NCBI GenBank assembly: GCA_047495785.1
Contig: JBLDXI010000025.1
Span: forward strand, 992,001-1,056,000
Source: Lepidodermella squamata
Taxonomy: Eukaryota; Animalia; Gastrotricha
DNA length: 64,000 nt
Direction: 5' to 3'
The position numbers and the translations under genes are program-made. Shown piece after piece: positions 22,869-44,562 of this stretch. The notes under the pieces are model-generated. The model ran no database searches, was not told where the DNA came from, and worked only from the letters and a program-made list of their open reading frames with translations. Within the stretch, counting starts at the first letter, position 1, and each line of letters begins with the position of its first letter.

Positions 22869-24318
22869 ATGGTGGCTTTTGCCCATTTACTTTCCGCTAG
22901 TTTGTTTCTCGGTGTGATTGCTTTATCACAAGCAATACAAATTTCGATAGAATCCCCTCGAAAGCCTCCGGCTCTCGAAGATGCTGAGCAGGATGCCGCT
23001 GCCCAGGCTTCATCGATTCGCGGTTTCACGCGTAAATTTTGAGTACCGGATGTTAGTTGGCAATAATTAGGCAATAATTAGGTCGCACAACGACTCGGAA
23101 ACCGACGAAGGTTGCGGTAGCGTCCGGATCTTCAGCTGCTAGTCGCCTGCTTTCTAGAAATTTGCCTTCAAATGAGACAGATAAAGCTGCGGCGACTAAG
23201 ACTACGACTACGACTACGACCGCAAAACCGACTACGACAACAACTACGACAAAGCCAACAACGACTACAACGACTACAACAACTACAACAACTACAACGA
23301 CAGCTAAAACTACTACGACGACTTCAAAACTTCTAGCGGCAGCTGCAGCGTCTGCCTCGACCACTGTCAAGCCGGCTAATGCCGGATGTGGCGTGAACAA
23401 ATACATTGGAGAAGGATATGCTTCGGTTCCACGCTCCAGAATTGTTGGCGGAACAAAGGCCGCGGATGTGGAATTTCCGTGGCAATCGTTCCTCCTAATA
23501 TACAGCCAAATCAACCAGGGGTACTACCTTTGTGGAGGCAGTCTTATTGACAAAAACTGGGTCATCACTGCTGGTCACTGTTGCGATCTGGCTTCGTCTG
23601 CTGGGTAAGAAGCTTTGACCAATAAGGATCATTTCAATCGTCGAAATTTCCAGAGATATCGTCGTGAGCCTTGGCAATAATACGCTATTTGACAGCGAAG
23701 GGTATCTCGCGAAGTTTCCTTATCAAAATTCAGCTACTCGCATGGTGAAACATAGCGGATACATTCCTGTAACGTACACCAACGATTACTGCCTTCTGCA
23801 AATACCAAGTGGGTTTTATGCTTGTAAACGAAATCGGAAAATCTGTGTGATTATATTAAATAGCTGTCAGTTTGTCCACGTGGAACATTCAACCGATCTG
23901 TTTGCCCAGGCAATGCGATTCTTCTTTCAAGGGAGAATGCGTTGCTGGTCAGAATGTCACTGCAAGTGGATGGGGCCACACTCAAACCGCAGGATCGCTG
24001 TCAAGCAATCTGAATTTTGTCCCGATTCCGATCGCCAATTTTGACGAATGCGCCCGTAAATTCGTCATGCCGCTCGACTCGAACAGTATGATGTGTGCTG
24101 GCGGTCTCGCGGGCCAGGGCGTCTGCCAGGGAGACTCGGGTGGTCCCCTGTCTTGCGTCTACAATGGCCGCCATTATTTAACGGGCATGGCTTCGTTTAA
24201 TGATGCAGAAGGCTGCGCCTTGACGAACATGCCTTCGGTATTTGCAAAAGTCTGCACCGTTCGCTCATGGATCGATTCAACGATGAGCACATCCCGTAGC
24301 ATCAACAGGCAGGGCTGA
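22869..24318 (+). CDS. Secreted S1A serine protease A with Thr-rich stalk; exons 22869-23022, 23082-23604, 23654-23808, 23864-24318
   Basis: Signal peptide MVAFAHLLSASLFLGVIALSQA; activation R|IVGG; triad TAGHC, NDYCLL, GDSGGP. Confidence 0.9.
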
Positions 24319-25343
24319 GGTTGTGCTTTCTTTCAGACCATCAATTATTCAAGCAGACACTAAAACGCTATGACCATACATTTTACCACTAAGACATCGA
24401 ATTAGTTGTAACAGAAACTTAAAACTGTTTGATACCACGAGGTACCCATGGAAATCGGAATCTTGAAACATTGATAGCTGTGAATAAAATAATAATTCTG
24501 CTGCCGTCGTCGTATCTGTGGCATGGGTCTTCATGTCCCATTCATATTTCCCCTCTAAACAGAATTTTTATGAGGAAATATCTGATTCTGATACTTGCTC
24601 ATTGTGACGCTGTAACGGAATTTCCTCATCAATAGAACTAGTTGCCTATGCTTTTCGAAACATTAACATAATTCTTATCAGTTATGAATAATCGCTAGGC
24701 TCGTAAACCGTGGAATCCAGATATTTGATAGCTCCGTAGCTTATTTTGATCAACTACTCCGGAAAAAATCACTTGCTAACGATTGAAAAATTACTAACCT
24801 TCCGGCTTATCGCAAGTTTCGGTGCTGCAAATTGACACCTTTTGTGGCAACATTCTTGACTGAGGTATTAAAATTTCAAGATTGAAAGACCATTAACATG
24901 ATTGAACTCTGAACTATGTGGAACTCGATTACTCAATCTGAACAATTATTCTGAATTGATCTGAATTATTCTGTATCAATGTAATTATGTAATTATTCAA
25001 GGTCTAACAATTATTCTGAACAATTCCCATTCTTGAATATCTTGAAGATCTTGAACGGGATAGTGAAATAACACTAATTTCTACTTAGACCCCGCCGAAT
25101 CTAAACTCGACCGTAGAATGTTCGAAGCCATTACCTGTGTTAGGAGTTAGGAAGTTATTCATCAAACAAAGCATTACTGCATTCGTTTATTACCTGACGT
25201 CCGGTTTACTTCGGCAAGTTAAGCCAGACAATCCGAATACACTGTGTTAAACGCGTAGTGCAATTGATCCCGGCATGGTTAGAATACGTGCCACGGGAAT
25301 TTAATGAAACATATACGTACATTTACCCATTCTTCGCTGGAAA

Positions 25344-26841
25344 ATGGCATCTTATAGCATTTTGTTTTCCATAACACTAGTCTTAGGAAATACACTATTC
25401 CTTGCAGCCATCGAGATATATATTCAGGCTCCCCGAAAGCCTCCAGCACTCACTGTGACTAGAAATGCGAATGAACCCGCCGAAAGTAAGGCGCGTTTAG
25501 CTATTATAATAAATATTGGGATTGATTAATTTTTTCAGCTCGCCATCTAACCACCCGGAAACCAACGAGGGTTGTAATACCGCATAGTTATTCGGAGGGT
25601 CGCATTTTATCGAGGGACAGGGTTGGCTCTACGCTAAAGTCTTCGCGCACAACGACTACAAAGGCAACGACAACAAGAACTACGACTATTAAAACAACGA
25701 CTACCAGAACCGCAAGGATTACAACCACGGCACCTAGAACAGTCAAGCCAAAGCAGACTGGTGCCCCTAAAACCAAAACAACCACACAGTCCACCACCAC
25801 GACCACCACCCAGGCGAGTACTACAGAAACGACGACAACGACCCCTGCAACTACGGTAACCACAACAATTAAAGCCGCAATAGCTGGGTCACTGTCGACA
25901 GTAGTCAATCCAGCCGATGCCGGATGTGGCGTGAGCAAATACGTCGGAGAAGGGTACTCCTCAGTTCCACGCTCCAGAATTGTTGGCGGCACCAGAGCTG
26001 CTGAACTGGAATTCCCATGGCAATCGTTCCTTTTGATATACAGCCAAATAAACCAGGGCTATTTCATCTGCGGTGGCAGTCTCATCGATGAAACATGGGT
26101 GATCACTGCTGCCCACTGCTGCGACCTGGCCTCGTCGGCTGGGTGAGTTTCGCATGATGGACTAGCTTAATTACAAATTGTGATTTGCAGGGATATTACA
26201 GTCCATCTTGGCAACAATACTTTATTCGACAATATAGGGAACATCGGGCAGTTCCCATATCAGAATTCAGCTATACGTATGGTGAAACATAGCGGATACG
26301 TTCCAGTAACTTACACTAACGATTACTGCCTTCTTCAAGTTCCAAGTGAGATTTCGAAAGGGGTTTTGAAGGAGGTTAAATACATGTTCTTGAAATAGCT
26401 GTCAGTTTGACCACGTGGAACATTCAACCGATCTGTTTGCCCAGGCAATGCGATTCTTCGTTCAAGGGAGAATGCGTTGCTGGTCAGAATGTCACGGCAA
26501 GTGGATGGGGTCATACCCAAACCGCAGGATCGCTGTCAAGCAATCTGAATTTTGTCCCGATTCCGATCGCCAATTTTGACGAATGCGCCCGTAAATTCGT
26601 CATGCCGCTCGACTCGAACAGTATGATGTGTGCTGGCGGTCTCGCGGGCCAGGGTGTCTGTCAAGGGGACTCAGGCGGACCTCTTTCCTGTACGGTCGAA
26701 GGCCGCCACTACTTGACGGGCATGGCTTCGTTCAACGACGCGGAGGGATGCGCATTGCGCATGCCTTCCGTTTTTGCGAAAGTTTGCACTGTTCGCTCAT
26801 GGATTGATTCGACGATGAATAGCAACAGTAGACAAGGCTGA
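25344..26841 (+). CDS. Secreted S1A serine protease B (close paralog of A); exons 25344-25485, 25539-26142, 26191-26345, 26399-26841
   Basis: Signal peptide; Thr/Arg-rich stalk; RSR|IVGG; TAAHC, NDYCLL, GDSGGP; same intron positions as A. Confidence 0.9.
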
Positions 26842-27316: not shown

Positions 27317-27541
27317 ATGGTTTTAGCTTATGCAATTTTGAGCCCGATGTTTCTTGCTGTAGTAGTCTCTGCTTGTGCCTCGGGCATTCCGAGCACTCCG
27401 AACCCAGCAAGATCGATTTATGGCCAACAGCCAAACGTCATCACCCCCTCGCCTGGGCAGACTACGGCCAAGGACGTCAATTTGTACGATACCACAACGC
27501 AGCGACCATCGACGATAACTACCAGAAAGGATGGTGGCTGA
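27317..27541 (+). CDS. Small secreted Thr-rich protein 1 (novel motif family)
   Basis: From the internal Met: MVLAYAILSPMFLAVVVSA-C..., motif PNVITPSPGQTTAKDVNLYD shared with three neighbours; TATAAAAG at ~27058. Confidence 0.6.
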   Translation: MVLAYAILSPMFLAVVVSACASGIPSTPNPARSIYGQQPNVITPSPGQTTAKDVNLYDTTTQRPSTITTRKDGG

Positions 27542-28070: not shown

Positions 28071-28553
28071 ATGTTTACCGGGCCCGGTCTTTTAGCTGTT
28101 TTTATCCAGTTTATATGTGATCTCCCTACAGTTCAGGTTTGTGCATCATCGCCTGAGCCTGAGCGAAAGGTTGCTACAGATTCACCAGTGATAACGCCTC
28201 CGCCTTGGGCCACCCTTCCGACTGATCTTAACTTCGATGACAACTCTTCGACGAGTCAGGAAACTACTTCAATTTCGACAACAAAACTGCCGATGAGTTC
28301 AACTGCTGCTGCAATCACTACCGCCACGGCCATTACTACTACAACAACTAGCTCCACTAATCCAGCGAGCTCTACTACGATGCCAGCGTCTGTAACCACG
28401 ATGGCTACAACAAAAACTACAACTAATAAGGCTCCATCCTCTACTACTACCACCGCTAGTACTACTACTACAACTACTACAACTACTACTAAAGTTGCTA
28501 TGACTACTAATACCACGAGGGCAACAACAACACGTCGTCGCATGCCTGGTTGA
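28071..28553 (+). CDS. Small secreted Thr-rich protein 2 (novel motif family)
   Basis: Hydrophobic N-terminus, C, RKVATDSPVITPPPWATLPTDLNFDD, long Thr/Ser tract, ends TTRRRMPG. Confidence 0.75.
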   Translation: MFTGPGLLAVFIQFICDLPTVQVCASSPEPERKVATDSPVITPPPWATLPTDLNFDDNSSTSQETTSISTTKLPMSSTAAAITTATAITTTTTSSTNPASSTTMPASVTTMATTKTTTNKAPSSTTTTASTTTTTTTTTTKVAMTTNTTRATTTRRRMPG

Positions 28554-29457: not shown

Positions 29458-29760
29458 ATGATGTCAAGCAACCTGATGGTATTAACAGCAGTTATTACGA
29501 TGCAACTTGCACCATTTGTCGATCTCTGCCAATCAGTATCCGACGATCGCAAGAAAGTGACTGATCCACCGGAGATAACCCTGCCGCCTGGCGAGTCCAC
29601 GCCGAAAGACTTTGATTACAACGAATTGTCAACGGCAACACCACCTAAAACTGCAGCGCCGACTACAACAACTACAACAACAAAAGGTACTACAACAACC
29701 ACTACCACTACTACTACGAGGCCCACTACTAGTCGCACTACACGGAGAACTGGAAGATAA
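29458..29760 (+). CDS. Small secreted Thr-rich protein 3 (novel motif family)
   Basis: Hydrophobic N-terminus, CQ, RKKVTDPPEITLPPGESTPKDFDYNE, poly-Thr, ends TTRRTGR. Confidence 0.75.
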   Translation: MMSSNLMVLTAVITMQLAPFVDLCQSVSDDRKKVTDPPEITLPPGESTPKDFDYNELSTATPPKTAAPTTTTTTTKGTTTTTTTTTTRPTTSRTTRRTGR

Positions 29761-30097
29761 TTCATAACTATCTTAAATTAAAGAATTGTTTAATAATATC
29801 AGCCGTATAAAACAAATGCCAGTCAACTATTTGAGATCATTGACAGACAGACAGCCTTAACAGCAAATAACCAAAATAGCAGATGAGACAAAACAGCTAG
29901 ATCATGTAAAAAGAGTGTTTTCGCTGTCATGTCGCAAGTAAAAAAATTTGATTTTCTTCGCTTTCGCTGTTATGCGCTATTGCAAGGAAAAATCAACAGG
30001 TCAGAAAAATCGACTTTTTGCCTCTCCGACGCCTTGGTACTCCTTACGGGAGATCTCAGGTCATCTTGGTGAACTCTCTCGATCTCCAACCGTATTT

Positions 30098-30354
30098 CTG
30101 GAAGCTTCTAATAATGATTTTCAAATTCTCCGTACTCGATTTAGTAACCAATGATCTGTTACAGAGATCTCGACCGCCCAAAGTCATTCGACGAAAAGGT
30201 GTTACTGGTTAAGATGACACCCTAACCCACCCAAACTAAAGTTGACTGATGAAGATCTCCTGAGACTCACTATTTGAAGATGAACCCGCTAAAACATCCT
30301 TGCTTTACTAAATCGAGTACGGACAATTTGAAAATCAATATTAGAAGCTTCCAG
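30098..30354. repeat. Inverted repeat (~50-bp arms, ~155-bp spacer), probable MITE/foldback remnant
   Basis: 30098-30147 CTGGAAGCTTCTAATAATGATTTTCAAATTCTCCGTACTCGATTTAGTAA is the reverse complement of 30305-30354 with 2 mismatches. Confidence 0.75.
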
Positions 30355-30936
30355 GAGCTTCATCCTCCGCTGCGATATTTTGAGATTTTCCGGGAAAACG
30401 GGGAACTTTGAACCCGACTTTTTCTTATCGAATTTCCTATTCAAAAGGCATTCAACGCTGCAGTTTCGGCGAATCGGCGCTATACAGTCTACATTTGTTG
30501 TAGGAACGACGCGGCGCATGGAGTAAACCTGGGCTACTGCTGCCGCGGAAGATCTTTTCGTGGTGGGGTGCTGAGAAAACATCGATAGCTCAACTATTTA
30601 GTAACGAATAAGAATCATATGCGGTCAAATCTTCTGGCAGTGGTCTTGCAAATTGTTCTAAACGGCTTGGGATTTTGAGGATTTCGGGGTCACTGACGTT
30701 CCAAAGACACGTGATGGCACTCGCCAAATCCTAATCCTAATTCCTAATTATTCATTGGCAGATAAGACTATTCTTGACTCGGTCGTGGCGAGATTTCATG
30801 CTCATCTTGTTGTAAAAACCTCTGAAGTCAATAATTGAGATAGAGTGACGAAAGCACGAAAAACTTTTGAATACTTACACACGCTGCATAAAAACTTACT
30901 ATCAAAGCTGTACAAATTACAAATTCACGCCAATAA

Positions 30937-31194
30937 ATGTTGCTGCTACGTGGATCAACTAGGCTAGCTCTCATCATGCTCCTACCAACTGTTTACCTTT
31001 GTCAACCTGACCCAGGACGAATACGGCCGACAGATCACCCAGTAATCACATCTCCTCCTGGAGCAAGGCCACCAGTCGACAGAAATCCTGATGACACAAC
31101 TCCATTTGACGTTATACCTGATTGGAGGTTCCTCTCAAGTCTGACGGAAATTAAGTCAACTCCAACCCCAGAAAACGGCAATGTTCCAAAATGA
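30937..31194 (+). CDS. Small secreted protein 4 (novel motif family, lacks long Thr tract)
   Basis: MLLLRGSTRLALIMLLPTVYL-CQ, RIRPTDHPVITSPPGARPPVDRNPDD; AATAAA just downstream. Confidence 0.7.
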   Translation: MLLLRGSTRLALIMLLPTVYLCQPDPGRIRPTDHPVITSPPGARPPVDRNPDDTTPFDVIPDWRFLSSLTEIKSTPTPENGNVPK

Positions 31195-31248
31195 AATTTT
31201 AATGAATTTAGATTAATAAATTGCTTTCAAATAAGTAAAGCGTTTGTC

Positions 31249-32564
31249 TCATAACTCGAAAAGTTTCTCTTTAGCTTCTGCGGGCAGTAGTCTAACCGGA
31301 GATTTCAGGATACCTCGTAGCAGCCTCTCAAAGTCGAGGGTAATCAATTGGCAGATCCTGCATATCTTGCGGCAAGCATCTGTTGACATGGTTGTTCTTC
31401 GTAGATTACCACTGCTTAGATTGCTATTCAACTCTGAGATAACATCCAACGCCTGAGCGATTGTTTCACATCGACCGAGCTCGAATAGAAGGACAGGGGG
31501 ATTGTAACACAGCCGAAAGATTTCTTGCTCTCGCCAGTTTTTCAAGCCATGAATCGCAGTTTGACAGACCTTGGCTAGGCGCTTCTCTTTAGCACAAGCA
31601 GGTGCTGTAAGGTCACGAATAACTTGGGCGATCTTGTCAATCGAGAATGAATCGCCCAGTCTCTGCTCGATGATCTCCTTCAGAACTGCTGATTCATCTG
31701 AATTGATTGTTGCACTGCTGCTTGAAGTTCCCAGCCTTTCTTTATCGCGCGGTGGCAGAATCGAGTCGAGCTTCATTATGATCGGCAGGCTGGCCTCGAC
31801 TCGAAAGAAATTGAAGATGTTGTAAAGAATCTCAACAACACAAGTTCGCATATCGTCGAACGCTGTCATAACAGCTTCGTTGCAGTAGGGGAGGAGCATT
31901 CCTCCCAAAATGTTTTCTGACTCCTGTTTGACCATTTCCAGAGCCTCACGGGTTCTATCAAAGGGGGCCTTGTTTCTCCCTGAGTTATCTATTTGAATTT
32001 CGCTGAAATGTGATTCCATTTAGAATTCGATTATGTGTAAATGAAATATTCAACTTACCCTAGGTCGTCTGGAGGCCAGAGGGTTTCTTTCTGGGCTTCT
32101 TCCGGAGGTTTCACCTCAGATTCGCGCGATGGCATAGCATCTAAAATAATTGTCTCAGTGAGAGCAAATACATTGTCATTTGCTTCGGCTCGAACAAATA
32201 TGTTCTCTGGCTCAGTCTGAAGTTCACCATCAATTTTCTCGTTTGCTGAGCTCTCAGTCATTACATGAGCAGTTGGCGTCAAATTTTCTTGCACAGGTTT
32301 GAGCTCTGACAGAGACGATGTTTGGTCAATCGATTTGCCAGGCTCAGATGGTGACTGATCGATGATCGCATCAGTTGATAGCTTTTCACTTTTGATTTCA
32401 GCATTACTGCCGTCATTAATAATTGATGGCTCTTGATTCGCAGCGGAAACACTTTCAGAATTAGGTATCGCTTCGGATGAATTCAAATCGCTGTGAGCAT
32501 TGCTGGAGAGAACCCTAATATCCGCCGATACTGAAGAAGCTTCTTGCAAATCCAAAGAACTCAT
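31249..32564 (-). CDS. Hypothetical protein; acidic Ser-rich N-terminus plus predicted helical C-terminal domain; exons 32564-32059, 32002-31249
   Basis: Two long ORFs joined in frame by a 56-nt GTAAG...TTTCAG intron; no recognised domain. Confidence 0.65.
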
Positions 32565-33060
32565 CAATATGGTTGGAGGTTAAACTTGTATCTCTGTAGG
32601 AAAGAAATGTGAGTTCAATGGCTCAGAGAAATGCGAATGAATGGAAGATGAGCGTTTTATTCATCTCTTGCGAATTAAGTTTTTTTCATGCGTGCAATTC
32701 AATCGATAAAACACAGCTGTGGCTTTTGATTGACACGTATGCAGCTTTTGTTCACCTAACAACTCCAGGGACTACGAATAAGTTCAAACGCCCAATTGCA
32801 TTATTATGAGGATAAATTTGGAAGGAGGAGGCGAACAGGTTTTACCATTTACAACAAGTTTAATTGCTATGAGTAAGCGGAAACCGTGTAGGTAAATTGA
32901 CCTGTGATGCCTGCTAGGTTCATCAAATTGCTGCCAGCTTCTTCCAGCCTATTGTAAACATAAGAACGTGCGTGACGGCGAAGACACGTTCTTGTCCGTG
33001 TTAGCTTCTCTTAAGAACGACAATGCATGGAAAGAGAGATAAAAGTCGTGTCTTTAAAAA

Positions 33061-34834
33061 ATGAGGAAAGTTTTGAAGTTGCTACTACTGATACTACTGA
33101 TAGGGTTGCTTGATTTTGCGGATAGGGTGAGTGGTTGCCAGATTTCTCAAACTCCGGCAAGAGGAAAAGAGACTTCGCAGACAACAACAACAACAACTAC
33201 TACTACTACAACGACCACAACGAAACCTACAACAAAAACTGTTTCCTCGACGTCAACCTCAACAACCAGAGCCCCTTCGACAACACCTAGCACAGCAGCA
33301 GCATCAACCCCGACTACAACATCTTCTTCAACAACTCCTAGCACTACTACAACGACTGCTTCAACAACGGCCTCATCGGCTACCACTAGCTCTTCAGCGA
33401 CCACTGCTAGCACTACAGTAACGATAACCACCCCAACAACTACTACAACTACTACTACTACTACACCTGCTCCAACAACCACAACGACTACGACTACAAC
33501 CCCAGCACCAACCACCACTACTACTTCAACTACGACCCCAACCCCAACAACCACTACTTCAACTACTCCTGCTCCAACAACCACAACCACTACGACTACA
33601 ACCCAAACCCCAACTACCACTACTACTTCAACTACGACCCCAACCCCAACAACCACTACTTCAACTACTCCTGCTCCAACAACCACAACCACTACGACTA
33701 CAACCCAAACCCCAACTACCACTACAACTACGACCCCAACACCAACAACCACTACTTCAACTACTCCTGCTCCAACAACCACAACCACTACGACTACAAC
33801 CCCAGCACCAACTACTACTACTACTACAACTACTACTACGACTACAACAACTACCACCCCAGGGTCAACGACTCAGACTTATACTAACCGATGCGGCCAT
33901 ACTCAGTACAACAACTCGGGAGAATCCGCTGGTAGCACCTATAGGATCGTTGGAGGAGTGAATGCTTTGACCAATGAGTTCCCATGGCAGTCATTCCTCT
34001 ACATTTACTCGAGAACGGCAAAGAGTTACTACCTATGTGGCGGAAGTTTAATCAGTGATTCTTGGGTATAGGCTCTGAACTCCGAATTCGACCCATTATC
34101 TCAAAATGCCTTTTTTAACAGATATTAACTGCAGCCCATTGCTGTGTGTTGGCTACTGTAGGCTCAGATATACAGGTCTATCTCGGTGGAGCGAATTTGA
34201 GCCTACCCTTTGCCTATGGAAGGAGCGCACTATCTATGACAGTACATGCAGATTACAACAAATCTGGGCGGACAGAAAATGACATATGCTTGCTGAAAAT
34301 CCCGAGTGAGTAGGGTTAAGCTATCAGGTTTTATTTCATTGCGTAATTCTTTTGTTTAGCTGTGGCATTGACATCATGGTCGATCCAACCGATTTGCCTC
34401 CCGTTAGACTGTAGTAGTACCTACGAATGCCAGGCTGGCACGAATGCAATTGCGTCCGGCTGGGGCTTAACTGCAACTAGTTAGTCAAAAATTCTAACAG
34501 ATTCTATCATTTTGATGATTCTCTGTCCCTAATAGATGGTTACACGTCCACAATGTTGAAATGGGTGAAACTGCCTGTAATCGATTGGAATGCCTGTAAG
34601 AGTTTTTGGTCCATTCTAACCAGTGGCCAAGTCTGCGCTGGAGGCATCAATCTAGAAGGAGTGTGCCAAGGTGATTCGGGCGGTCCGTTGACCTGTGTTA
34701 TCGATGGGAGGAGCGTCATAAATGGTATAACTTCATACGGATCAGCCGCTGGGTGTGCCCTCAGCAATGTCCCGAACGTTTTCACGCGAGTTTGCCAATA
34801 CAAGGCGTGGATTGATTCAGTAATGCAGGCATGA
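33061..34834 (+). CDS. Secreted S1A serine protease C with ~230-aa PTS mucin stalk; exons 33061-34065, 34122-34305, 34360-34479, 34536-34834
   Basis: Signal peptide; (T)nPAP/PTP repeats; YR|IVGG; TAAHCC, NDICLL, GDSGGP. Confidence 0.9.
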
Positions 34835-35104: not shown

Positions 35105-35401
35105 TCATTCGTTTGAGGCCTCCGGGACAACGACTGGGGATTCAGTGGTCGTCGTCGGCGGGCGTGATCCACGCGGCGGTGGTGGTGGTGGTCGGGAGTG
35201 AGGCGGGCGGCCAGCAGTTCCATTGCGGTGGGGTGGAGGAGGCGGGCGGCTGCCATTCGGAGGAGGAGGCGGGCGACTGCCGTTTGGCGGTGGCGGTGGC
35301 CGTGAGAATTCGCCGTTATCGGGGCGCTCACTTTCTTCAGCCGAGACTATGGCAGTAAAAACTGCTACAGCCAAAACGCAAGAAATGATCAAACGAACCA
35401 T
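35105..35401 (-). CDS. Secreted Pro/Arg-rich peptide precursor
   Basis: Signal peptide MVRLIISCVLAVAVFTAIVSA, acidic spacer EESERPDNGEF, repeats of (NG)SRPPPPP; TATA-like TTATATAA at 35461-35468. Confidence 0.8.
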   Translation of the reverse strand: MVRLIISCVLAVAVFTAIVSAEESERPDNGEFSRPPPPPNGSRPPPPPNGSRPPPPPHRNGTAGRPPHSRPPPPPPRGSRPPTTTTESPVVVPEASNE

Positions 35402-35980: not shown

Positions 35981-36301
35981 TCAACGGCGAGGCCGCGTTG
36001 TTCCCCACGAGTCGGTTGAGAAAGGTCCTCGAGTTGTTCCCCAGTTTTCAGTTGAAAACGGTCCTCGAGTTGTTCCCCAGTTTTCGGTCGAAAAAGGTCC
36101 ACGAGTTGTTCCCCAGTTTTCAGTTGAAAACGGTCCTCGAGTTGTTCCCCAGTTTTCAGTTGAAAACGGTCCTCGCGTTGTTCCCCAGCTTTCGGTCGAA
36201 AAAGGTCCACGAGTTGTTCCACGTGTCTGTGGAGTTGTCGGGGCTGCCGAGACAGCAGCGACGAGCAGCGTTACAGTCAAAGCAGCGATAACACGAGCCA
36301 T
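35981..36301 (-). CDS. Secreted protein made of six 12-aa tandem repeats (TTRGPFSTENWG)
   Basis: Signal peptide MARVIAALTVTLLVAAVSA; 36-bp DNA tandem repeat at ~35995-36220; basic C-terminus TTRPRR. Confidence 0.75.
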   Translation of the reverse strand: MARVIAALTVTLLVAAVSAAPTTPQTRGTTRGPFSTESWGTTRGPFSTENWGTTRGPFSTENWGTTRGPFSTENWGTTRGPFSTENWGTTRGPFSTDSWGTTRPRR

Positions 36302-36988: not shown

Positions 36989-37958
36989 TTAGGCCTTGAC
37001 GTAAGGCGTTTTCAGATTATAATTTCCAGCAGGGCCATAGTTGCAAGCAATAAGGACTTGATCCTTAGTCTTGTAACCATTGAAAGGACTTTCGGCGACA
37101 GGGGGGCTGCAAACAGCCACTCCACATCCAATATGAGTCGTGTTGTCCCACACAAGTTGCGTGTAGTGACCGACGACCTTGCCATTGATAGAGCCAGTGC
37201 CGTGTTTGAAGTCGATTCGCTCATCGGCCCAAAGGTCGATAGCGTCGATGATAACACGGCTAACGTCGAATGGTGCAGTTGCAAGGTAGAGATTCTGACC
37301 AACAGCCGACCAGCCCTGTTTATTCAGATTCGTGCGATTTTTCCCAGCATCATGGCTGTAATTGCACTGCGCTGCCCATCTGAAAGGTCCGAGAATACTA
37401 AGTACTTCAAATAGATTTTTCACGCTTCCTACCTTTCTGCAGTTGCTGCAAGATCATCATCCCATTGGAGAATGGCCATGCTTCTAGCTTTGGGATCAAC
37501 ATTTTGACGCCAGCAGTTGTGGCGGTCGACGGCTTGACTCTGTGAAACAGCGACCAAATCCTTGAGATTAGCAGCGTCCTCCAAACACCGAGATGGGGCA
37601 TCATAACCTCCTTTGTTACATTGATTCTGAGAAAAACAATGAAGCACGTCATAACTCAAAAGAATGAATTCCTAACCCCTCTTCTTGGACCGCTGTATGG
37701 GCCTACGTATGGCAAATTTTCTTGGCAAGGAGCGTTTTCGAAACCCTTACAAACAGGAACAGGCTGAAGCCATGCCCCATTAACGCATTGAATGGTCCCG
37801 CCACCACCTGACTGACAGGTGTAGGTCACAAACATGCCTTGGCTGTTTGATTTCCATGATGACTTGTAGCCACCAGGAATGCGCTCAGGAACAGCAGGGC
37901 AGCTAACTGCAGCTTCAACGGCTACCAAAGCAGATGCTAGGATGAAAGCTGAAATCAT
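36989..37958 (-). CDS. Secreted Sushi/CCP + CAP (SCP/TAPS) domain protein; exons 37958-37677, 37626-37433, 37379-36989
   Basis: Signal peptide; CCP-like C...YTC...C.NGAW..PVPVC; CAP motifs HNCWR, LQWDDDLAATAERWA, GQNLY, GHYTQLVWDNTTHIGCG, CNYGPAGN. Confidence 0.9.
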
Positions 37959-38126
37959 TTTTTTCTTGGGCGAAACAAGTGTCGCTTTTTCTCGGGCAGT
38001 GTCTCGCTGAGTAAATAATACGGCTAATATGTATTCAACTGTGGAAACAAGTGGGGTTAAGCACGATTTGAGTAAATTGGCTATTATATAACACTTTTTA
38101 TTAGAAAAAATAACGACCAGGCATCA

Positions 38127-41100
38127 TTAGAAAAATGTAGAATCACCGTCGCTTTTTGACTCTATGAAAGATGTGGTTGAGGCCTCAGTCGCTGTTCCTG
38201 AAGAATTTCCAGGCGACAAAGACAGCTTGCGTTTTAGCTTGGCGAGGCCAGACAACTTTTGACATGTCAAACGGCGCTTGGCCGCTCTGACTAATTTCGG
38301 GCTAAGGCTCTGCAGAAGCGGGCTAATAGCTGCGTTGAAATAGACAAAGCCTAGGGCGATAACAAAGTAAGAAGATTGTGTTGAATAGCGGTAAGTGCCT
38401 ATGGCTTGATATATGGTCACGGCATTGATTGGAGTCGAACAAACTGGAAAAAATGAAATAACATTTATTGAAATTGAAAGTTTTAATGAGCTTACCAATG
38501 AAAAGCACGACGATTATAATCATAAGCTTGGTCAGAAAAACTTCCCGCCTTCTGCATCTAGCATAGGCTGCTGAGGCCGAGTGGAGCCGATCTCGGAAGT
38601 TTGAAGTTTGACTCGAATTACTAAGTTTAGCCTTGAAGAAAGTCGAAGCCACTGTTGCGAATGATACATTCTGCTCCAGTCCAGCTATCGAGTTCGACTT
38701 CTGCCTTTTGAAGATGATAGGCTCTCTAAAGCTATTGTTCGTTGTACTGGCAGACTCTTTCAGCAGAGGTGAGGACGACTGCCTTTCACCCATTGACGAA
38801 CTTGAGTTCAGAGGTGCGTTCGATATTGGCTCTGGTAACGAAGATCTACTTCGAGGATTGAACTTTTTCGTCATTGCTCGTATTGAAGACATTATTCTCA
38901 GATAATTCACAAGGATCAGCGGAACTGGAACCAATACAGTTGCAATCAGCAAGGTCCCGGCTTGAATTGCGGATCCTGAAGTGGAGCGCTGGCCTCCTAA
39001 AGGAATGCGCCAGTTGAAAACGGAACAAACGTGAACCATGTCGTCATCAGCTCCAAATTTCGCACCGGGGACTTTTACCTGCCTCACCTCTGCAACGCCC
39101 ATGACGAAGTAAGGAATCGACCAGATAGATATGTCCATTATAGCGAGAACTGATAATATATGAGATTCTTATTCGGCACCTTTCGGCACCTTTCGGCACC
39201 ATTCGGCACCATTCGGCACCCGTCGGCACCCTTCGGCACCCTTCGGCACCATCTGCCTTAACTACCGCTTACACACCGCGGCAAGACAGTAGCGCGCGCA
39301 GATGACATATAATTACGCAAGAAAATTACTTATCTAATGCGTATCGCTTACATGTACATACATTGTCATAGGAAATAAATAAGTACAAGTAAGATGTTTA
39401 CGCTGTTTAGCGCTTTTTTCCAATCTAGGCGCGCGTATTTTGTTACGAACAAAGGCGCGCAGTAATCGCCGGTTACGGCATAGGTAGCCAGTTACGGCAT
39501 AATTAGCAGGTTACGGCAACTCGCTATTCGCAGAGCAGGGAATAACAGCCGTTGAAAAAGTATTTGTGCATTATGTATAGCGCATTATTTGAATTTTGCC
39601 AATATTCCTTCCGTTTTGAAATACACGCGGTTTTTACCTGCTGTGAAACAGTGCGATATCCAACCCATTCTATCCAAATTTCATGAATATCGTTTATTTT
39701 AGAAATCCCTGTCCATAAATCCTTTCCGCGCTGACGTTACCATCTCGGATCCCTAGATGCTGCATATACTCCTAGCATGCCTATAACAAATTTATTCTTC
39801 CATTCATTATTGAGCAGTGTTTTCATGAGACGTACTATGAGATGTCGTAGCTTGGAGAAAAGCAGAAGAACAGGGATTTTTTTATAATTTTTGCGATCTT
39901 GAGCTTTCATCATCATCATCTTTGAGGGATTGCGGGCTTCGAAGCCGCAGCGCCTATATGAAATACGTCTCATGATTTTTGTCTGGCCCATGCTATCACT
40001 ATCTTTTTAAATGGTTTCGCAATCGCTGCACATTTTTTTCGCATTTTTTGATGCGCTAACCGTTATCGTTTCAATAGCAATTTTTTCTCCTCCGAGCCTT
40101 GTTATTACCGTATTACCGCGCTTCGAGTGTCATTCCACTATAGCTCGTTTTATAGTGACATGTCACTATGCCCCGTTTATAGTGACATGCCAGATTAAAT
40201 TTCAATGCAAAACATTAGGTGCCACTATAATCGAGGTAAATGAAAACCTGTCAAAAACCATGTTTCACTTTATAGTGGCATGACACTCAAAGCGCGGTAA
40301 TACGGTATGCATCTTCTTACTTAAATTTTATCGTAAAACTGTATTGCTCTCAAGCTCTGATTTCCAGGCTTCAGAAAGCAAAGGAAAGCTTTTTGTTGAA
40401 TCTGTTGACAGTTCAAATCAGCTTCAAATTATAATAAATGAAGAGAGAATTGAGATAAGGTCGTGTTGAAAGTTTGTTTGTCTTGATTTGAGTCGAATTT
40501 TGCCACCATTTGGTCAGGTCGACAACCCCTCCGATGTCATTCTGATGTGGGTCCTATGATTCCAATAGTATTGAGTTAGCAGTTAGCATGTGCTCTTTGG
40601 TCTTTGGTATCTTCACTTTGTGCGATTGAAATGGTAGGAAAAGTTATTTTTGCGTTAGCTATAATCTTGCTCCTACTAAAACTGTGTGTCACTACAACTC
40701 TTGGTTGGTTCTAGGTTGGAACGCGGTGCGGAATGAGGTTGAAATTTGAGTGGCGGATTGATTTCACCTCTGATATCTAGACGAATTGAATGTCCGCTAA
40801 AGCACATATGACTAATTAAAGAATCCGTTTCGTCCCATTGGAAGCTGAATGAGCCAGTACTATACCCGGGTCGCAGTTGAAATTTTATGCGAAAAACGGT
40901 ATTCGGTCTGCCAGTACAATATTTCAAAAGGGAGGAAGTAATTAGCCGGCAGATTCAAAGCTCTAAAATTTGGGATCGTTTAGGCCGGCGTTAGTCAGGG
41001 TGCCTTCCCAATATACGTTACTCATAGCGAAGAATTGACCTATTTGTGGCAGAATCCATTAAAAGACACCGCTTCTCCCGCCAAAAACGTGAGGAAGCGA

Positions 41101-42232
41101 AGCCTAAATCATTTCCTGTTGTAAGAATAGCAATGAAGTTAGATACGCTCACTTGCTATGCCAAGTGCTTTTATGTGAAAGATTCCTGATTCGCCACAAC
41201 CTTGACCAGAACAGCATGAGAATTCGCTCAGGGTTTTGAAGCAAAGACGCGAGATTCCAACGACATTTCGTAAAATCACGTTTATCAGAAGCTAGCGCCG
41301 CAAAAGAAATTATTATTCAAAAAAATGCTGAGCCTTTAGCAGCTACGAGCTACATCAGCATTCGGTGCCTAGTGGTCGCGCTTGTATTAAAAAATGTGCG
41401 GTTGAAATAATTTAAAGGTTCCAACATGGCTCTAAGCACGGCTTTCCTGATTGATTTGAATAAAATAAAATAAAATGCAAATAGTACGCTGATGACATGA
41501 CCTCTTGCCATTTTATCTATCTTTTTCAGCCAAATGCTAACGTTGCAGGAGTGTATTAATAAAAACGGTACTAAATAGACAACAGTCTAGCTTCTTCCCC
41601 ACCTTTTAAAGATATTTTCAGCACCGCATAGCGTTGATTCGTCGAATACCGCAGTAAATTTGAAGATTCTGCTTTCCGTGCCAAAAATATAAAAAGCTGC
41701 CCACGAATTATCTAACTGATAGAGTCACTGCGACAAATTGCATTGTTAGCTGTTTAGATTTGTCGCGATTTGTTATACAAATCCTGCGTTCAATGCTTAT
41801 GAGGCACATTATCCAGAACGACATGCAGACAGTGGCAATGGAGCCGTAGAACCAAGTTACGCAGCCCCATTCGCCTAGAGGCCAATCGTCGGATAGGCGA
41901 ACTATCGCCACCATCAAACCAAGGAGACAAAATGCGATGTTACAAGTTGCCAAAGCGATGACAAGGAGCAGGAAAGCTGGTCGAACTTTACGTTGTTTGA
42001 AGTTGTAGACTGCAAGAATGTTAGAAGGAATTCCAGCTAAGCATATGATTCCTATCACCGCTGCCTCCAAAAACGGCAGGAAGAAGTTGTCGCGATTCAA
42101 TTGAGTTAGGAACAAGAACCACCATCTAGGTTCAGGCCAGCCGCGTTCCGGAAGAGCCGTGCAAATCCACGACTGGCCAACAGCACCTCCCGCATCGAGC
42201 GGGCATGGTTGTGACAAATTTTGTTTCGACAT
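38127..42232 (-). CDS. Class A (rhodopsin-like) orphan GPCR; segments 42232-~41717, ~39150-38496, 38443-38127; first junction does not splice in frame canonically
   Basis: TM1 GIPSN, ECL1 DWPLGEWGC, TM3 ISIERR, TM4 WSIP, TM5 VPVPLILVNYLRI, TM6 FIVCSTP, TM7 FNAAISP. Confidence 0.8.
39172..39250. repeat. 10-bp minisatellite (nTTCGGCACC) x8
   Basis: Directly visible at the edge of the GPCR interruption. Confidence 0.9.
40106..40307. mobile_element. 202-bp pogo-type MITE
   Basis: TACCGTATTACCGCGCTTCGAGTGTCATTCCACTATA at the left and its reverse complement (2 mismatches) ending ...GGTAATACGGTA at the right; TA flanks; same TACCGTA terminus as the right end of the 95-543 element. Confidence 0.85.
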
Positions 42233-43160
42233 GCCACACCATGAAATGGAATGGAAAACCTATAGAATCGAGTCAGCCAAAAGCGGAAGTTTATAAATTA
42301 TTAAAATGCGCAATGTAGTTAATAAAAAATGAGGAAGCCAATGGCAATTGGCAACATCTGCTGGGTGGCTGGATTTTTAGTGATAAAACAATGATTAGTT
42401 CGGCGTTCACTTATCTCGAACGTGATATTCCAATGCTCCCGTTAACCTTTTCAAAATCGATAAAATTCAGATTTTTTCATAAGAAATTCGGCCTAGTAAT
42501 TGAGTAACTGAGAAGGCTATGGAGCCGTGACACAAAATCAATGGTGTGGAAAAATTGGTGAATACTGCGACGTGGGCAGCAATATAATACACTCTTATTG
42601 ATTTAAATATAAAAACAATGATATATGTTTATTCCGAAACGTAATTCCGCACTTCCGTAGGTCTGCGGGATCTCAAAAACATCCGTTCTATCTGCGTCTG
42701 ATTATTGCAATCATTTAATAAAAGCAAACAACGCGGGGCTGGAAATTAAATTTTCGGTCATTCAAGCCCGGATAACAAGTTGGGAGTAACTTTCTAAAAT
42801 GCGTCTTAATTTTGCATTCAATTGATTCATAATCTATGCGCATGGGCTAAATATAAGTATATACTAAATATATTGACTATGTTTTTTAATCTAGTTAGCC
42901 GAATCGCGCTTTTGATTCATTTATACAAGTTATGAGTCAGAACATGCCGGCAAGTTGTTTTTTTAAGAAAATGTATAACAGAACAAATTGAACAAAGAGC
43001 TGATGAAAAAAATCGCAATTTGTGTGCAGCTTTGTTATGATAGCTGCTGCGGTCATTGTTCCGCATATATTGCGTGGGGCTGACCGGCAAGCTGAAATCA
43101 CGATTTTTCCACGAAATAATAGACCTGAGACCAGGAAACCGAGAAATTAAAACACCGCCA

Positions 43161-44562
43161 ATGCTTGTTACACTGACCTTGGTCTTTATCGCATCTGGCA
43201 TAGCAGATGCATGCCAGGGGACGTCTTCTCGTGCGTTATCTAGAGCCCAGAGTGCGGACAATCTCGGTCTAGCTGATGCTAACGCAGTGTGGACGCCTAC
43301 GACTACAACGTCTACGTCGATGGGAACACAGTCCCAGAGCATGACGACGACAACAACAACGACTAGAGCGCCCCCTGCAACTTTGTGGACATGGATGCCA
43401 CCAACACTTAACGTCACTTTGTTTACAAACACTGCCGCTCCTACCACGACTGCTTCTTCCACAATGATGACTATGAATGGTTCAACAGTTTCCACACCGA
43501 CAACTAGCTCATCTGCAAGAACCTCCACAGTAGCTTCGACAGTAGTTTCAACCACGGTCACTCAACCGTCTCCAACTACGACGCAGACTTCTACCACAAC
43601 CGCTACACCTGTGGTTTGCGGCAGGACTAGATATTCTGAAGGAGTCACTGCGAGGATCGTAGGCGGGGATAATGCTCGGCCAGGCGAATTTCCGTGGCAA
43701 GCTCAGTTGCGAATCTACGATGTGACCAACAACAGAAGACTCGGCTGTGGAGGAACTCTGATTCACCCTTTATGGGTAATTTAAGGATAATTTGAGGAGT
43801 TATTAGTAAATATATCGTTAGGCTGAAGTGTTCTAGACTAATTTTATCTGACATTTTCGAATAATCACAGGTATTAACCGCTGGTCATTGTTGTCTCAGC
43901 GAATCAACGATCTTGGTCAGTTTGGGGGATTCGTCAGATCGATACGAACTACCAGCTTTACAAGCAATCCGACATCCCCAGTTCTCGCAAAATCTCACCG
44001 GGCTAACGAATGATATATGCCTACTGAAAATCAGAGGTTGTAATATTCTTTTTTCTTGTCCATTTCATAATGCTTGGCTCAAATTTCAGAGCCTAACATG
44101 ACATCATGGTCAATCAGACCAATTTGCCTTCCTTCCGATTGTGGACCTTCCAGCGAATGCCAGCCGGGTCAAAATGTTGTCCTATCAGGATTCGGTTTGA
44201 CAGAAACAAGTATGCCGCTGTATAACTGATCACTCTGATATCATTTTTCGTTTTCTTTAGATGGTAACTCTAGCGCCCAACTGAAATACGTGCAAAATCA
44301 AGTGGTTTCAAGAGAGCGATGTTCGAGATACTGGACCCAAATTGATGACTCAAAACTATGCGCTGGGGGTGAATGGGGAAAGGGTGTTTGTAACGGCGAC
44401 TCTGGAGGACCAGCGGCTTGCAACATAGACGGCCGCTATGTCTTGAATGGCGTTGTTTCCTATGGCTCAGTTTTCGGATGTGCTCTCAACGAGCTGCCAG
44501 CCATTTTCGAGCGAGTCTGTTTCTACATAAATTGGATACGCTCTATAACTGGCTTGTCTTAA
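43161..44562 (+). CDS. Secreted S1A serine protease D with Thr/Ser stalk; exons 43161-43775, 43871-44036, 44090-44209, 44261-44562
   Basis: Signal peptide MLVTLTLVFIASGIADA; AR|IVGG; TAGHCC, NDICLL, GDSGGP; intron positions as in protease C. Confidence 0.9.

What the first reader, a model, noticed from the sequence alone, without database searches (positions are those of the whole stretch)
22869..44562. Multi-family secretory gene cluster (proteases, novel peptides, CAP, GPCR): candidate gland/venom/mucus-defence locus
Seen: 11 of 13 genes in ~22 kb encode signal-peptide proteins from at least five unrelated families, most with O-glycosylatable Thr tracts and basic or Arg sites. Knowledge: S1 proteases, CAP proteins and Pro/Arg-rich peptides are recurrent components of venoms, saliva, seminal fluid and mucosal defence. 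Inference: a co-regulated secretion module in which unrelated families are physically clustered.
Basis: partly seen in the sequence, partly recalled or inferred. Interest (0 to 1): 0.75.

Follow-up and report, generated by a model that had tools for sequence, protein, structure and literature searches.

The report
Neighbourhood of secreted-protein genes
A 22-kb stretch of a small invertebrate's genome really is packed with genes for secreted, sugar-coated proteins (four related proteases, a private family of tiny proteins, three singletons), but nothing yet shows they are switched on together or form a venom; such neighbourhoods are a known kind of thing.

Summary
Window 22869-44562 carries 13 genes. 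Eleven start with a signal-peptide-like hydrophobic N-terminus. They fall into five families with no detectable similarity to each other:
- four S1 proteases (P1-P4) with Thr-rich (PTS) stalks
- four small "PxITxPPG" proteins (pepA-D)
- a Pro-rich protein (PRP)
- a 12-residue-repeat protein (WG)
- a Sushi-like + CAP protein

A uniform scan of the whole 64 kb found signal-like ORFs only inside this stretch.

P1-P4 group together among the 17 sampled paralogues, with an intact triad, an R|IVGG activation site and Gly189 where most sampled paralogues have Asp189. P1/P2 are under purifying selection (dN/dS 0.08) and carry a gene-conversion tract. The small proteins occur nowhere else in this genome, and the pep family has no true relative among 1.84 billion proteins.

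The GPCR is not secretory. Its coding exon is split by a 2.57-kb transposon that has a 100% identical copy elsewhere.

The interpretation (a co-regulated gland, venom or mucus module) stays untested. No upstream k-mer is shared beyond chance. The CAP gene's nearest paralogues have no protease neighbours. Synteny in a relative could not be read, and expression data were unreachable. A second CAP + protease + PTS locus does exist.

Verdict: a real secretory gene neighbourhood, a new member of a known kind, of modest interest.

The parts
22869..24318 (+). P1: signal-peptide exon + Thr-rich stalk + S1 protease, 4 exons, about 430 aa
   Evidence: Pfam Trypsin on exons 2 and 4. Introns of about 50-58 bp were fitted by GT-AG and reading frame. 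H57, D102 and S195 are present, with activation site PRSR|IVGG.
25344..26841 (+). P2: tandem paralogue of P1, about 447 aa
   Evidence: Pfam Trypsin. Exon 4 is 94% identical to P1. In exon 2, dS is 1.17 and dN 0.10 (ratio 0.08). The first 250 nt of exon 4 have dS 0.12, which marks a gene-conversion tract.
27317..27541 (+). pepA: 74-aa secreted orphan, PxITxPPG family
   Evidence: Alignments A1 and A2. Pairwise z-score 8.8 to pepB. Signal-like N-terminus.
28071..28553 (+). pepB: 160-aa secreted orphan, 32% Thr, ends RRRMPG
29458..29760 (+). pepC: 100-aa secreted orphan, 30% Thr, ends RRTGR
   Evidence: In the whole genome only the window's own pep genes match it.
29987..30355 (.). About 370-bp repeat (MITE-like) between pepC and pepD; it matches itself in both orientations
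   Evidence: Many copies at 68-89% identity across the genome.
30937..31194 (+). pepD: 85-aa secreted orphan of the same family, without a Thr run
   Evidence: z-score 13.4 to pepB.
31249..32567 (-). gene7: orphan, acidic/Ser-rich, no signal peptide, two exons
   Evidence: No Pfam family. No homologue by word search. Nothing usable in the ESM Atlas.
33061..34834 (+). P3: signal peptide + about 270-aa PTS domain + S1 protease, 4 exons, 535 aa, 34% Thr
   Evidence: Pfam Trypsin. Gene model and catalytic residues. The PTS domain holds 3.9 copies of a 102-bp unit at 33445-33833.
35105..35401 (-). PRP: 98-aa secreted protein, 29% Pro, three RPPPPPNGS/T repeats carrying N-glycosylation sequons
   Evidence: No paralogue in the genome. 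No Pfam family.
35981..36301 (-). WG-repeat: 106-aa secreted protein, six copies of TTRGPFSTENWG, ends RPRR
   Evidence: TRF finds a 36-bp unit x 6.2 at 88% matches. No real paralogue in the genome.
36989..37958 (-). CAP gene: signal peptide + 4-Cys Sushi-like module + CAP domain, 3 exons, about 270 aa
   Evidence: Pfam CAP at 47.7 bits. Best PDB matches are GLIPR1 and CRISPs. An intact spliced ORF exists. Exon 1 aligns to the Pfam-positive Sushi of a paralogue at E 0.001.
38127..42232 (-). Rhodopsin-class GPCR (not secreted), interrupted in TM4
   Evidence: Pfam 7tm_1 at 40.9 bits on exon 1. Weak PDB matches to aminergic receptors. With the insert removed the ORF is open for 445 or 447 codons, depending on the junction used, and a hydrophobic helix spans the junction.
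39151..41722 (.). 2.57-kb non-autonomous transposon inside the GPCR coding exon
   Evidence: A 100% identical copy lies at C1:4965210-4967781, a 99% copy on C34, and 87-90% copies on C9, C15 and C17. The junctions were compared. It carries 10-bp subterminal repeats and a nested 37-bp-TIR MITE at about 40102-40308.
43161..44562 (+). P4: signal peptide + Thr/Ser-rich stalk + S1 protease, 4 exons, 400 aa
   Evidence: Pfam Trypsin. Gene model and catalytic residues. It sits at the base of the P1-P4 group in the tree.

Best explanation
This is a lineage-specific neighbourhood of genes for secreted, heavily O-glycosylatable proteins. It grew in place. Its backbone is a private group of four S1 proteases, branching as (P4,(P3,(P1,P2))). 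Each is made as a zymogen with a cleavable signal peptide and a Thr/Pro/Ser-rich mucin-like stalk. A Cys lies about 15 residues before the R|IVGG activation site and should pair with Cys122 ('PICLP'), so after activation the glycosylated stalk stays disulfide-tied to the catalytic domain. All four have Gly189 where most sampled paralogues have the trypsin-type Asp189, so they probably do not cut after Arg or Lys. Between them lie young genes without relatives: a four-member family of 74-160-aa PTS proteins, a Pro-rich N-glycosylatable protein, and a 12-residue-repeat protein. A Sushi-like + CAP protein completes the set. The most likely reading is that these products are released together into one glycan-rich extracellular compartment: a mucus layer, a gland secretion or the gut lumen. 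There the stalks would hold the proteases in the gel and protect them. Shown: the gene structures, the families, selection on P1/P2, in-place duplication, orphan status, and the clustering. Inferred: secretion, O-glycosylation, stalk tethering, substrate preference, and above all co-expression.
For: - **Families and intact active sites:**
- **Signal-like N-termini:** found only in this stretch of the window.
- **P1-P4 as one group:** support 87/88 among 17 sampled paralogues, and one group in 89% of bootstrap trees.
- **Specificity pocket:** all four share G189-V190; 11 of 13 sampled paralogues have Asp189.
- **Selection:** P1/P2 dN/dS is 0.08 at dS 1.17, with a gene-conversion tract in exon 4.
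- **Thr tracts kept at amino-acid level:** the tracts use mixed ACN codons and form only imperfect short-period arrays.
- **Pep family:** members are related to each other (z 8.8-13.4 for the pepB-centred and pepC/pepD pairs; 3.0-3.5 for pepA with pepC and pepD), but not to the proteases, PRP or WG.
- **Orphan status:** the small genes are unique to this locus.
- **A second mixed locus:** C1:1.386-1.396 Mb has Sushi/Kunitz-like/PTS/CAP genes beside a CUB-PTS-trypsin gene.
- **PTS tracts near S1/CAP genes genome-wide:** on contigs C1-C7, roughly 9 of about 30 loci with ten or more ACN codons lie within 10 kb of an S1 or CAP exon. This is a rough reading of the lists.
- **A precedent for co-expression:** trypsin-like and PR-1/CAP genes are co-enriched in an adhesive secretory tissue of another animal (PMC6626399).
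Against: - No expression data could be reached, because records of this genome are withheld from the protein collections (notes).
- No exact 6-8-mer is shared by the 11 upstream regions beyond chance.
- P3's promoter region is shared head-to-head with a non-secreted orphan gene.
- The CAP gene's nearest paralogues (C66 array) have no protease or PTS neighbours.
- The trypsin at the C1 locus is not close kin of P1-P4, so the CAP-protease pairing was not inherited as a block.
- The genome has at least 162 Trypsin exon matches (888 candidates) and 63 CAP matches, so some chance adjacency is expected.
- Signal peptides were judged by a hydrophobicity rule, not a trained predictor.
Confidence: 0.5

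Rival explanations
1. There is no functional module. The density of secreted-protein genes is a by-product of tandem duplication in a genome with hundreds of S1 protease exons and dozens of CAP genes, plus birth of short orphan genes in a permissive region. The families would be expressed in different tissues or stages.
For: - Only 5 independent secreted families underlie the '11 of 13' count.
- S1 and CAP genes are very numerous.
- No upstream motif is shared.
- The CAP gene's nearest paralogues are not linked to proteases.
- About 2000 windows of this genome were scanned, so one such run could arise by chance.
Against: - All signal-like ORFs of the 64-kb window fall in one third of it; at family level the chance is about 0.34^5 = 0.005.
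- PTS tracts recur next to S1/CAP genes elsewhere.
- Tissue-specific secreted genes are known to cluster in other animals (PMC6352337).
Confidence: 0.3
2. One reading: a venom or chemical-defence gland locus whose products act on prey, predators or microbes.
For: S1 proteases, CAP proteins and Pro/Arg-rich peptides recur in venoms and defensive secretions (general knowledge). Among the best solved matches of the CAP domain are snake-venom CRISPs and insect venom allergens.
Against: - The best CAP match is non-venom GLIPR1, and the protein ends right after the CAP domain, so it has no CRISP-type Cys-rich C-terminal domain.
- The small proteins have 0-2 cysteines and lack the amphipathic or Cys-knot character usual for toxins or antimicrobial peptides.
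- Mucin stalks suit retention in a gel rather than injection.
- The organism is unidentified and no venom apparatus is known.
Confidence: 0.07
3. A protease-substrate cassette. The WG-repeat and pep proteins would be propeptides cut by the neighbouring non-trypsin-type proteases, for example after Phe or Trp in each WG repeat, to release many copies of short bioactive or adhesive peptides.
For: WG has six near-identical 12-residue units, each with one Phe and one Trp. P1-P4 have a Gly189 pocket compatible with bulky or neutral P1 residues. The genes are adjacent.
Against: The repeats are not flanked by dibasic sites, and no Gly-basic amidation signal is present, so the classical prohormone layout fails. 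Protease specificity is only inferred from three pocket residues. There is no processing evidence.
Confidence: 0.08

Closest known systems
Drosophila salivary glue gene cluster (Sgs3/Sgs7/Sgs8 at 68C) and the other Sgs genes
   Same: Tightly linked genes for apparently unrelated secreted proteins. All start with signal peptides. Several have Thr/Pro/Ser-rich, O-glycosylatable internal repeats that change fast in number and sequence (PMC6352337). Here P1 and P2 keep their protease domains but have diverged stalks, and P3 has a 102-bp repeat array.
   Different: Glue clusters hold no enzymes. Here the backbone is a protease clade, and the PTS tracts are stalks on enzymes as well as free small proteins. 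Co-expression is proven for Sgs genes and unknown here.
Mosaic S1 proteases with a mucin-like region before the catalytic domain (enteropeptidase, other stalked or type II transmembrane serine proteases)
   Same: A zymogen with an Arg|IVGG activation site and a Cys that can keep the N-terminal region disulfide-linked to the catalytic domain. Enteropeptidase and plasma kallikrein are among the best solved matches.
   Different: The N-terminus here has a short (about 10-12 residue) hydrophobic core typical of a cleaved signal peptide, not a membrane anchor. There are no SEA, LDLa, SRCR or CUB modules. Residue 189 is Gly, not Asp.
Brachyurin / chymotrypsin-elastase-like digestive proteases of invertebrates
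   Same: The closest named relatives of the P3 N-terminal catalytic segment are Daphnia 'brachyurin-like' proteins at about 50% identity. The best solved match of exon 4 is pancreatic elastase 1. The pocket is not trypsin-type.
   Different: Identity is only about 50% over a 52-residue segment. Residue 226 is Ser, Asn or Ala here (my numbering of the sequences printed). No PTS stalk is expected in the classical digestive enzymes (from memory).
Single-domain CAP proteins (GLIPR1, antigen 5, PR-1 type)
   Same: Pfam CAP 47.7 bits. GLIPR1 is the best solved match at E 8e-15. The protein is secreted.
   Different: It carries an N-terminal 4-Cys Sushi-like module, an architecture repeated in paralogues on contig C1. 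It has no CRISP C-terminal domain.
Adhesive or secretory-organ transcriptomes rich in trypsin-like and PR-1/CAP genes (Exaiptasia pedal disc)
   Same: The same two enzyme and CAP superfamilies are co-enriched among secreted products of one secretory tissue (PMC6626399).
   Different: That result is expression-based with no genomic clustering reported. This one is clustering-based with no expression data.

Membership tests
Peptidase S1 (chymotrypsin fold, PF00089) | Profile match above the curated cut-off | tested here: met
   P1, P2, P3 and P4 exons score 24.8-88.4 bits against a cut-off of 20.6.
Peptidase S1 (chymotrypsin fold, PF00089) | Catalytic triad His57 / Asp102 / Ser195 | tested here: met
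   (A/G)HCC, NDxCLL and GDSGGP are present in all four.
Trypsin-type specificity (subset of S1) | Asp189 at the base of the S1 pocket | tested here: not met
   All four have Gly189-Val190; 11 of 13 sampled paralogues have Asp189. They are S1 proteases but probably not trypsins in specificity.
CAP superfamily (PF00188) | Profile match above the cut-off, and relatives among solved CAP structures | tested here: met
   47.7 bits against a cut-off of 21.1. GLIPR1, CRISPs, Ves v 5 and PR-1 appear in the PDB search.
CRISP-type venom CAP | C-terminal Cys-rich hinge plus ion-channel-regulatory domain after the CAP domain | tested here: not met
   The ORF stops 15-20 residues after the CNYxPxGN motif.
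Sushi/CCP module (PF00084) on the CAP protein | Profile match; four-Cys pattern with the conserved Trp | tested here: inconclusive
   No Pfam hit even at E 5. The C...C...C..W...C pattern is present, and the exon aligns at E 0.001 to a paralogue whose module passes Pfam Sushi at 24.8 bits.
Rhodopsin-class GPCR (PF00001) | Profile match; seven helices; E/DRY and NPxxY motifs; intact reading frame | tested here: inconclusive
   7tm_1 scores 40.9 bits against 30.5 on exon 1. Six hydrophobic helices lie in the long exon, plus one in the last exon. The motifs read ERR and SPLLQ instead of DRY and NPxxY. The frame is broken by a 2.57-kb insert.
Mucin-like (PTS) domain proteins | Long Thr/Ser/Pro-rich, often tandemly repeated tracts in secreted proteins; dense O-glycosylation | tested here: met
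   Composition and repeats fit: P3 is 34% Thr with a 102-bp unit x 3.9, and pepB and pepC are 30-32% Thr. Glycosylation itself cannot be tested with these tools.
Co-regulated secretory gene cluster (Sgs-68C type) | Physical linkage of unrelated secreted-protein genes | tested here: met
   Five families with no detectable similarity lie within 21.7 kb.
Co-regulated secretory gene cluster (Sgs-68C type) | Co-expression in one secretory cell type | not testable with these tools
   Records of this genome are withheld from the protein and contig collections. No transcript data are available.
Co-regulated secretory gene cluster (Sgs-68C type) | Shared cis-regulatory element | tested here: inconclusive
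   No exact 6-8-mer in the eleven 250-bp upstream regions exceeds Markov or random-window nulls. Degenerate motifs and distal elements were not examined.
Co-regulated secretory gene cluster (Sgs-68C type) | Linkage conserved in relatives or paralogous loci | tested here: inconclusive
   The relative's contig ends 228 bp after HECTD2. The JGI scan found nothing close. The C66 CAP array has no protease neighbour, while the C1 locus does pair CAP with a trypsin.
Neuropeptide / prohormone precursor (for WG and the pep family) | Repeated peptide copies flanked by dibasic cleavage sites, often with Gly for amidation | tested here: not met
   Each WG unit has a single Arg inside TTRG, and the Gly is followed by Thr-Thr. 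Basic residues in the pep proteins sit only at the C-terminal end.

The most novel reading that the evidence does not exclude
The locus is a self-contained, lineage-specific secretion cassette. A private clade of mucin-tethered S1 proteases with a remodelled pocket would be co-expressed in one gland with orphan PTS, Pro-rich and repeat proteins born beside them. Those small proteins would serve as the proteases' gel matrix or as their substrates. That would make this a case of new genes arising and being recruited inside an already active secretory chromatin domain.
Probability: 0.15. Interest if true: 0.6.

Novelty: new member of a known kind. Interest (0 to 1): 0.3.

Why it matters
If the genes prove to be co-expressed, the locus would be a compact example, outside the model organisms, of how a secretory tissue builds its product set. 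The steps would be tandem growth of an enzyme clade with glycosylated stalks, followed by birth of small orphan glycoproteins next to it. It would also give handles (stalked proteases, orphan PTS proteins) for studying mucus, adhesive or digestive secretions in a poorly known invertebrate. As it stands, it is a well-documented annotation and a candidate list rather than a new principle.

Tried and rejected
- **Exact look-up of nine window proteins** in the 15-billion-protein collection: none present. Records of this genome are apparently withheld.
- **Word search with the P3 exon-1 C-terminal segment:** only distant S1 proteases, with Daphnia brachyurin-like proteins the best named hits.
- **Word search with the orphan gene7,** meant as a synteny anchor inside the cluster: no hit. 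The ESM Atlas gave nothing usable.
- **Full HMMER search of a pep-family profile against 1.84 billion proteins:** the one hit, P0130, is a translated 62-residue satellite whose 19 weak repeat matches add up. I rejected it as spurious.
- **Synteny through the flanking HECTD2 gene:** an 80%-identical relative exists in two ENA metagenome assemblies and keeps the WD40-HECTD2 order, but both contigs end 228 bp after HECTD2.
- **JGI metagenome scan with P1 exon 4:** one unrelated 47% trypsin.
- **DNA search of the cluster against its own genome:** no second copy, only transposons.
- **Idea that the pep genes are truncated copies of protease 5' exons:** rejected. No similarity beyond shuffles.
- **Idea that WG or the pep proteins are prohormones:** rejected on cleavage-site layout.
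- **Operon-like co-transcription:** unlikely. Same-strand gaps are 476-1177 bp.
- **Literature search** for rotifer/trypsin/secreted gene clusters: nothing specific.


Full report
**What is there.** The window is G000:C25:992001-1056000 of a 121-Mb, 151-contig animal genome with very short introns of about 50-60 bp. It is not human.

- P1 (22869-24318, +)
- P2 (25344-26841, +)
- pepA-D (27317-27541, 28071-28553, 29458-29760 and 30937-31194, all +)
- an orphan gene without a signal peptide, 'gene7' (31249-32567, -)
- P3 (33061-34834, +)
- a Pro-rich protein, PRP (35105-35401, -)
- a repeat protein, WG (35981-36301, -)
- a CAP gene (36989-37958, -)
- a GPCR (38127-42232, -)
- P4 (43161-44562, +)

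Pfam confirms Trypsin four times, CAP once and 7tm_1 once, all above the curated cut-offs. It finds nothing for the small proteins or gene7. The flanks hold ordinary intracellular genes: ZNFX1-like helicases, aldose epimerase, a WD40 protein and HECTD2 upstream; an ankyrin-repeat protein and two PIWI genes downstream.

**Is it more than chance within the window?** I applied one rule to every ATG ORF of 60 aa or more on both strands of the 64 kb. The rule asks for Met followed within 14 residues by a 10-residue stretch of mean Kyte-Doolittle hydropathy of at least 2.4, with the rest of the ORF not hydrophobic. It gave 11 hits, all inside the finding and none in the 42 kb outside. Ten are claimed genes. 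P1's signal exon is too short for the 60-aa filter but has the same character. The eleventh hit is a GPCR helix.

Counted by family (five), the chance of all falling in this third of the window is about 0.34^5 = 0.005. That figure is not corrected for the roughly 2000 windows of this genome that the scan has read.

**The proteases.**
- **Architecture.** Each has a signal peptide and then a Thr/Ser/Pro-rich stalk. P1 has a run of 15 Thr. P3 has about 270 residues at 34% Thr, including 3.9 copies of a 102-bp unit. P4 is 15% Thr. After the stalk comes a Cys about 15 residues before an Arg|IVGG activation site, then a complete S1 domain with His57, Asp102, Ser195 and Cys122 in 'PICLP'.
- **Tethering (inferred).** By analogy with chymotrypsin and the stalked or transmembrane serine proteases, the pre-site Cys should pair with Cys122. 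The glycosylated stalk would then stay attached after activation.
- **Origin.** In a tree of 106-residue segments around Ser195, P1-P4 form one group against 13 sampled paralogues (support 87/88; 89% of bootstrap trees). The order is (P4,(P3,(P1,P2))), which fits growth in place.
- **Pocket.** All four have Gly189-Val190, while 11 of the 13 sampled paralogues have Asp189. With Ser, Asn or Ala at 226 (my numbering of the sequences printed), trypsin-type specificity is unlikely. The best solved match is elastase 1, and the best named relatives are Daphnia brachyurin-like proteins at about 50%.
- **Selection.** P1 and P2 are old duplicates under purifying selection (exon 2: dS 1.17, dN 0.10, ratio 0.08). 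The first 250 nt of exon 4 are nearly identical (dS 0.12), which marks a gene-conversion tract. The stalks and flanks no longer align.
- **Context.** PTS tracts also occur in several other S1 genes of this genome, so the stalk is a habit of this animal, not a peculiarity of this locus.

**The small proteins.**
- **Pep family.** pepA-D share a signal peptide ending in a conserved Cys, an Arg, the motif P-x-I-T-x-P-P-G and an Asp. pepB and pepC add Thr runs and basic C-termini. They are related to each other, with shuffle z-scores of 8.8-13.4 for the pepB-centred and pepC/pepD pairs. They are not related to the protease N-termini, PRP or WG. The only matches in the whole genome are the window's own pep genes.
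- **No relatives elsewhere.** A profile search of 1.84 billion representative proteins gave one hit. It is a translated satellite repeat and not a relative.
- **PRP and WG.** PRP has three RPPPPPNGS/T units and is 29% Pro. WG has six TTRGPFSTENWG units. Neither has a real paralogue in the genome.
- **Not prohormones.** None of these has the dibasic-flanked layout of a prohormone.
- **Are they real genes?** They have signal-like starts. pepA, pepC and pepD have AATAAA or ATTAAA 17-63 nt past the stop. The four pep paralogues keep a motif. Transcripts were not available.

**CAP and GPCR.**
- **CAP.** The gene can be spliced into an intact ORF of about 270 aa. It reads signal peptide, then a four-Cys module that Pfam does not call but that aligns to a Pfam-positive Sushi of a paralogue, then a CAP domain closest to GLIPR1 and CRISPs. 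It has no CRISP C-terminal domain.
- **CAP paralogues.** The nearest ones are five tandem copies on C66 at 54-60% identity, with no protease or PTS gene within 10 kb either side.
- **GPCR.** It is a divergent rhodopsin-class receptor with ERR and SPLLQ in place of DRY and NPxxY.
- **The insert.** The long coding exon is split in TM4 by a 2.57-kb element (39151-41722). That element has a 100% identical copy at C1:4965210-4967781 and a 99% copy on C34. With the insert taken out in a local script, the ORF is open for 445 or 447 codons, depending on the junction used, and a hydrophobic helix bridges the junction. On this haplotype the receptor is therefore freshly interrupted, and nothing ties it to secretion.

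**Tests of the 'co-regulated module' idea.**
- **Upstream k-mers.** The 250 bp upstream of the 11 genes share no exact 6-, 7- or 8-mer beyond what Markov-resampled or random-window sets give. TATAAGT occurs before P1, PRP and WG, but three of eleven is not unusual.
- **Shared promoter with a non-secreted gene.** P3 and gene7 are head-to-head, 494 bp apart.
- **Operons.** Same-strand gaps of 476-1177 bp argue against them.
- **Inheritance of the pairing.** The CAP-protease pairing was not inherited as a block. The C66 CAP array is alone, and the trypsin beside the C1 CAP array is not among P1's closer paralogues.
- **In favour of a wider pattern.** C1:1.386-1.396 Mb again mixes Sushi/Kunitz-like/PTS/CAP genes with a CUB-PTS-trypsin gene. 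On C1-C7, roughly 9 of about 30 loci with ten or more consecutive ACN codons lie within 10 kb of an S1 or CAP exon match. This is a rough reading, and five of the nine are in one cluster.
- **Cross-species synteny.** A relative with 80%-identical HECTD2 keeps the WD40-HECTD2 order, but both contigs stop 228 bp beyond HECTD2. The JGI scan found nothing close.

**Organism.** It is unidentified. Earlier notes of this scan guess a rotifer. After the 80% metagenome relative, the HECTD2 neighbour is most like mollusc, brachiopod, nemertean and annelid orthologues at about 50%, and no rotifer appears in the top 120. I therefore only say 'small-intron invertebrate, possibly spiralian'.

**Reading.** The best-supported picture is a secretory gene neighbourhood that grew in place. 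It consists of a private clade of mucin-stalked S1 proteases without the trypsin-type Asp189, orphan PTS, Pro-rich and repeat proteins, and a Sushi-like CAP protein. Their products probably meet in one glycan-rich extracellular compartment.

Which compartment (mucus, adhesive or other gland secretion, gut lumen) cannot be told. Trypsin-like and PR-1/CAP genes are co-enriched in an adhesive organ of a sea anemone (PMC6626399). Signal-peptide, Thr-rich, fast-changing repeat proteins lie in a tight cluster in the Drosophila glue locus (PMC6352337). The kind is therefore known. The venom reading has no specific support.

Exons were searched apart, by reference. Joined models were built only inside local scripts, to read catalytic residues, compute dN/dS and cut segments for the tree.
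- Signal peptides rest on a hydrophobicity rule.
- Secretion, glycosylation, tethering, specificity and co-expression are all inferences.

Noticed in passing
window 39151-41722 (inside the GPCR gene): A 2.57-kb element without long ORFs, with copies at 100% (C1), 99% (C34) and 87-90% identity (C9, C15, C17). It has eight 10-bp subterminal repeats (TTCGGCACC-like) at one end. I saw no obvious terminal inverted repeats. 'TGATA' is present at both junctions in all four copies compared, which hints at a site-specific or recombinase-type insertion.
   Followed up: partly
window 40102-40308 (nested in that element): An about 205-bp MITE with 37-bp terminal inverted repeats. More than 20 copies at 83-95% identity are scattered over the genome.
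   Followed up: no
window 29987-30355: An about 370-bp repeat between pepC and pepD with many genomic copies at 68-89% identity. It matches in both orientations, so it is palindromic and MITE-like.
   Followed up: no
window 23882-24121 versus 26417-26656: A near-identical 240-bp tract in exon 4 of P1 and P2, while the rest of the genes differ at saturated synonymous sites: gene conversion between tandem paralogues.
   Followed up: yes
L005 = G000:C1:1386001-1396000: A second multi-family secretory locus. It has several CAP exons with Sushi (Pfam), a weak Kunitz-like match and poly-Thr linkers, next to a CUB + poly-Thr + trypsin gene. It is part of a CAP-rich region at C1:1.37-1.43 Mb.
   Followed up: partly
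L014 = G000:C24:1925800-1928600: The closest paralogue of P1 outside the window reads GDGGS where the catalytic GDSGG should be, so Ser195 appears lost. It is possibly a non-catalytic protease homologue and is also Thr-rich.
   Followed up: no
P0130 (public protein library): A 1182-aa 'protein' made of 19 copies of a 62-residue unit, evidently a translated satellite. It scores E 2.6e-16 against the pep profile only by summing weak repeat matches, which is a trap for profile searches.
   Followed up: yes
L011, L012 (ENA metagenome contigs ERZ27333047, ERZ23486787): A related, unidentified animal with HECTD2 80% identical to the window's and the same WD40-HECTD2 gene order. Both contigs break just where the secretory cluster would begin.
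   Followed up: partly
window 31249-32567 (-): gene7 is an acidic, Ser-rich two-exon orphan without a signal peptide, a Pfam family or any detectable homologue. It sits head-to-head with P3.
   Followed up: partly
window 63698-63769 (-) and 63888-63969 (+): Two tRNA genes in divergent orientation at the far end of the window (Rfam, 61.4 and 51 bits).
   Followed up: no
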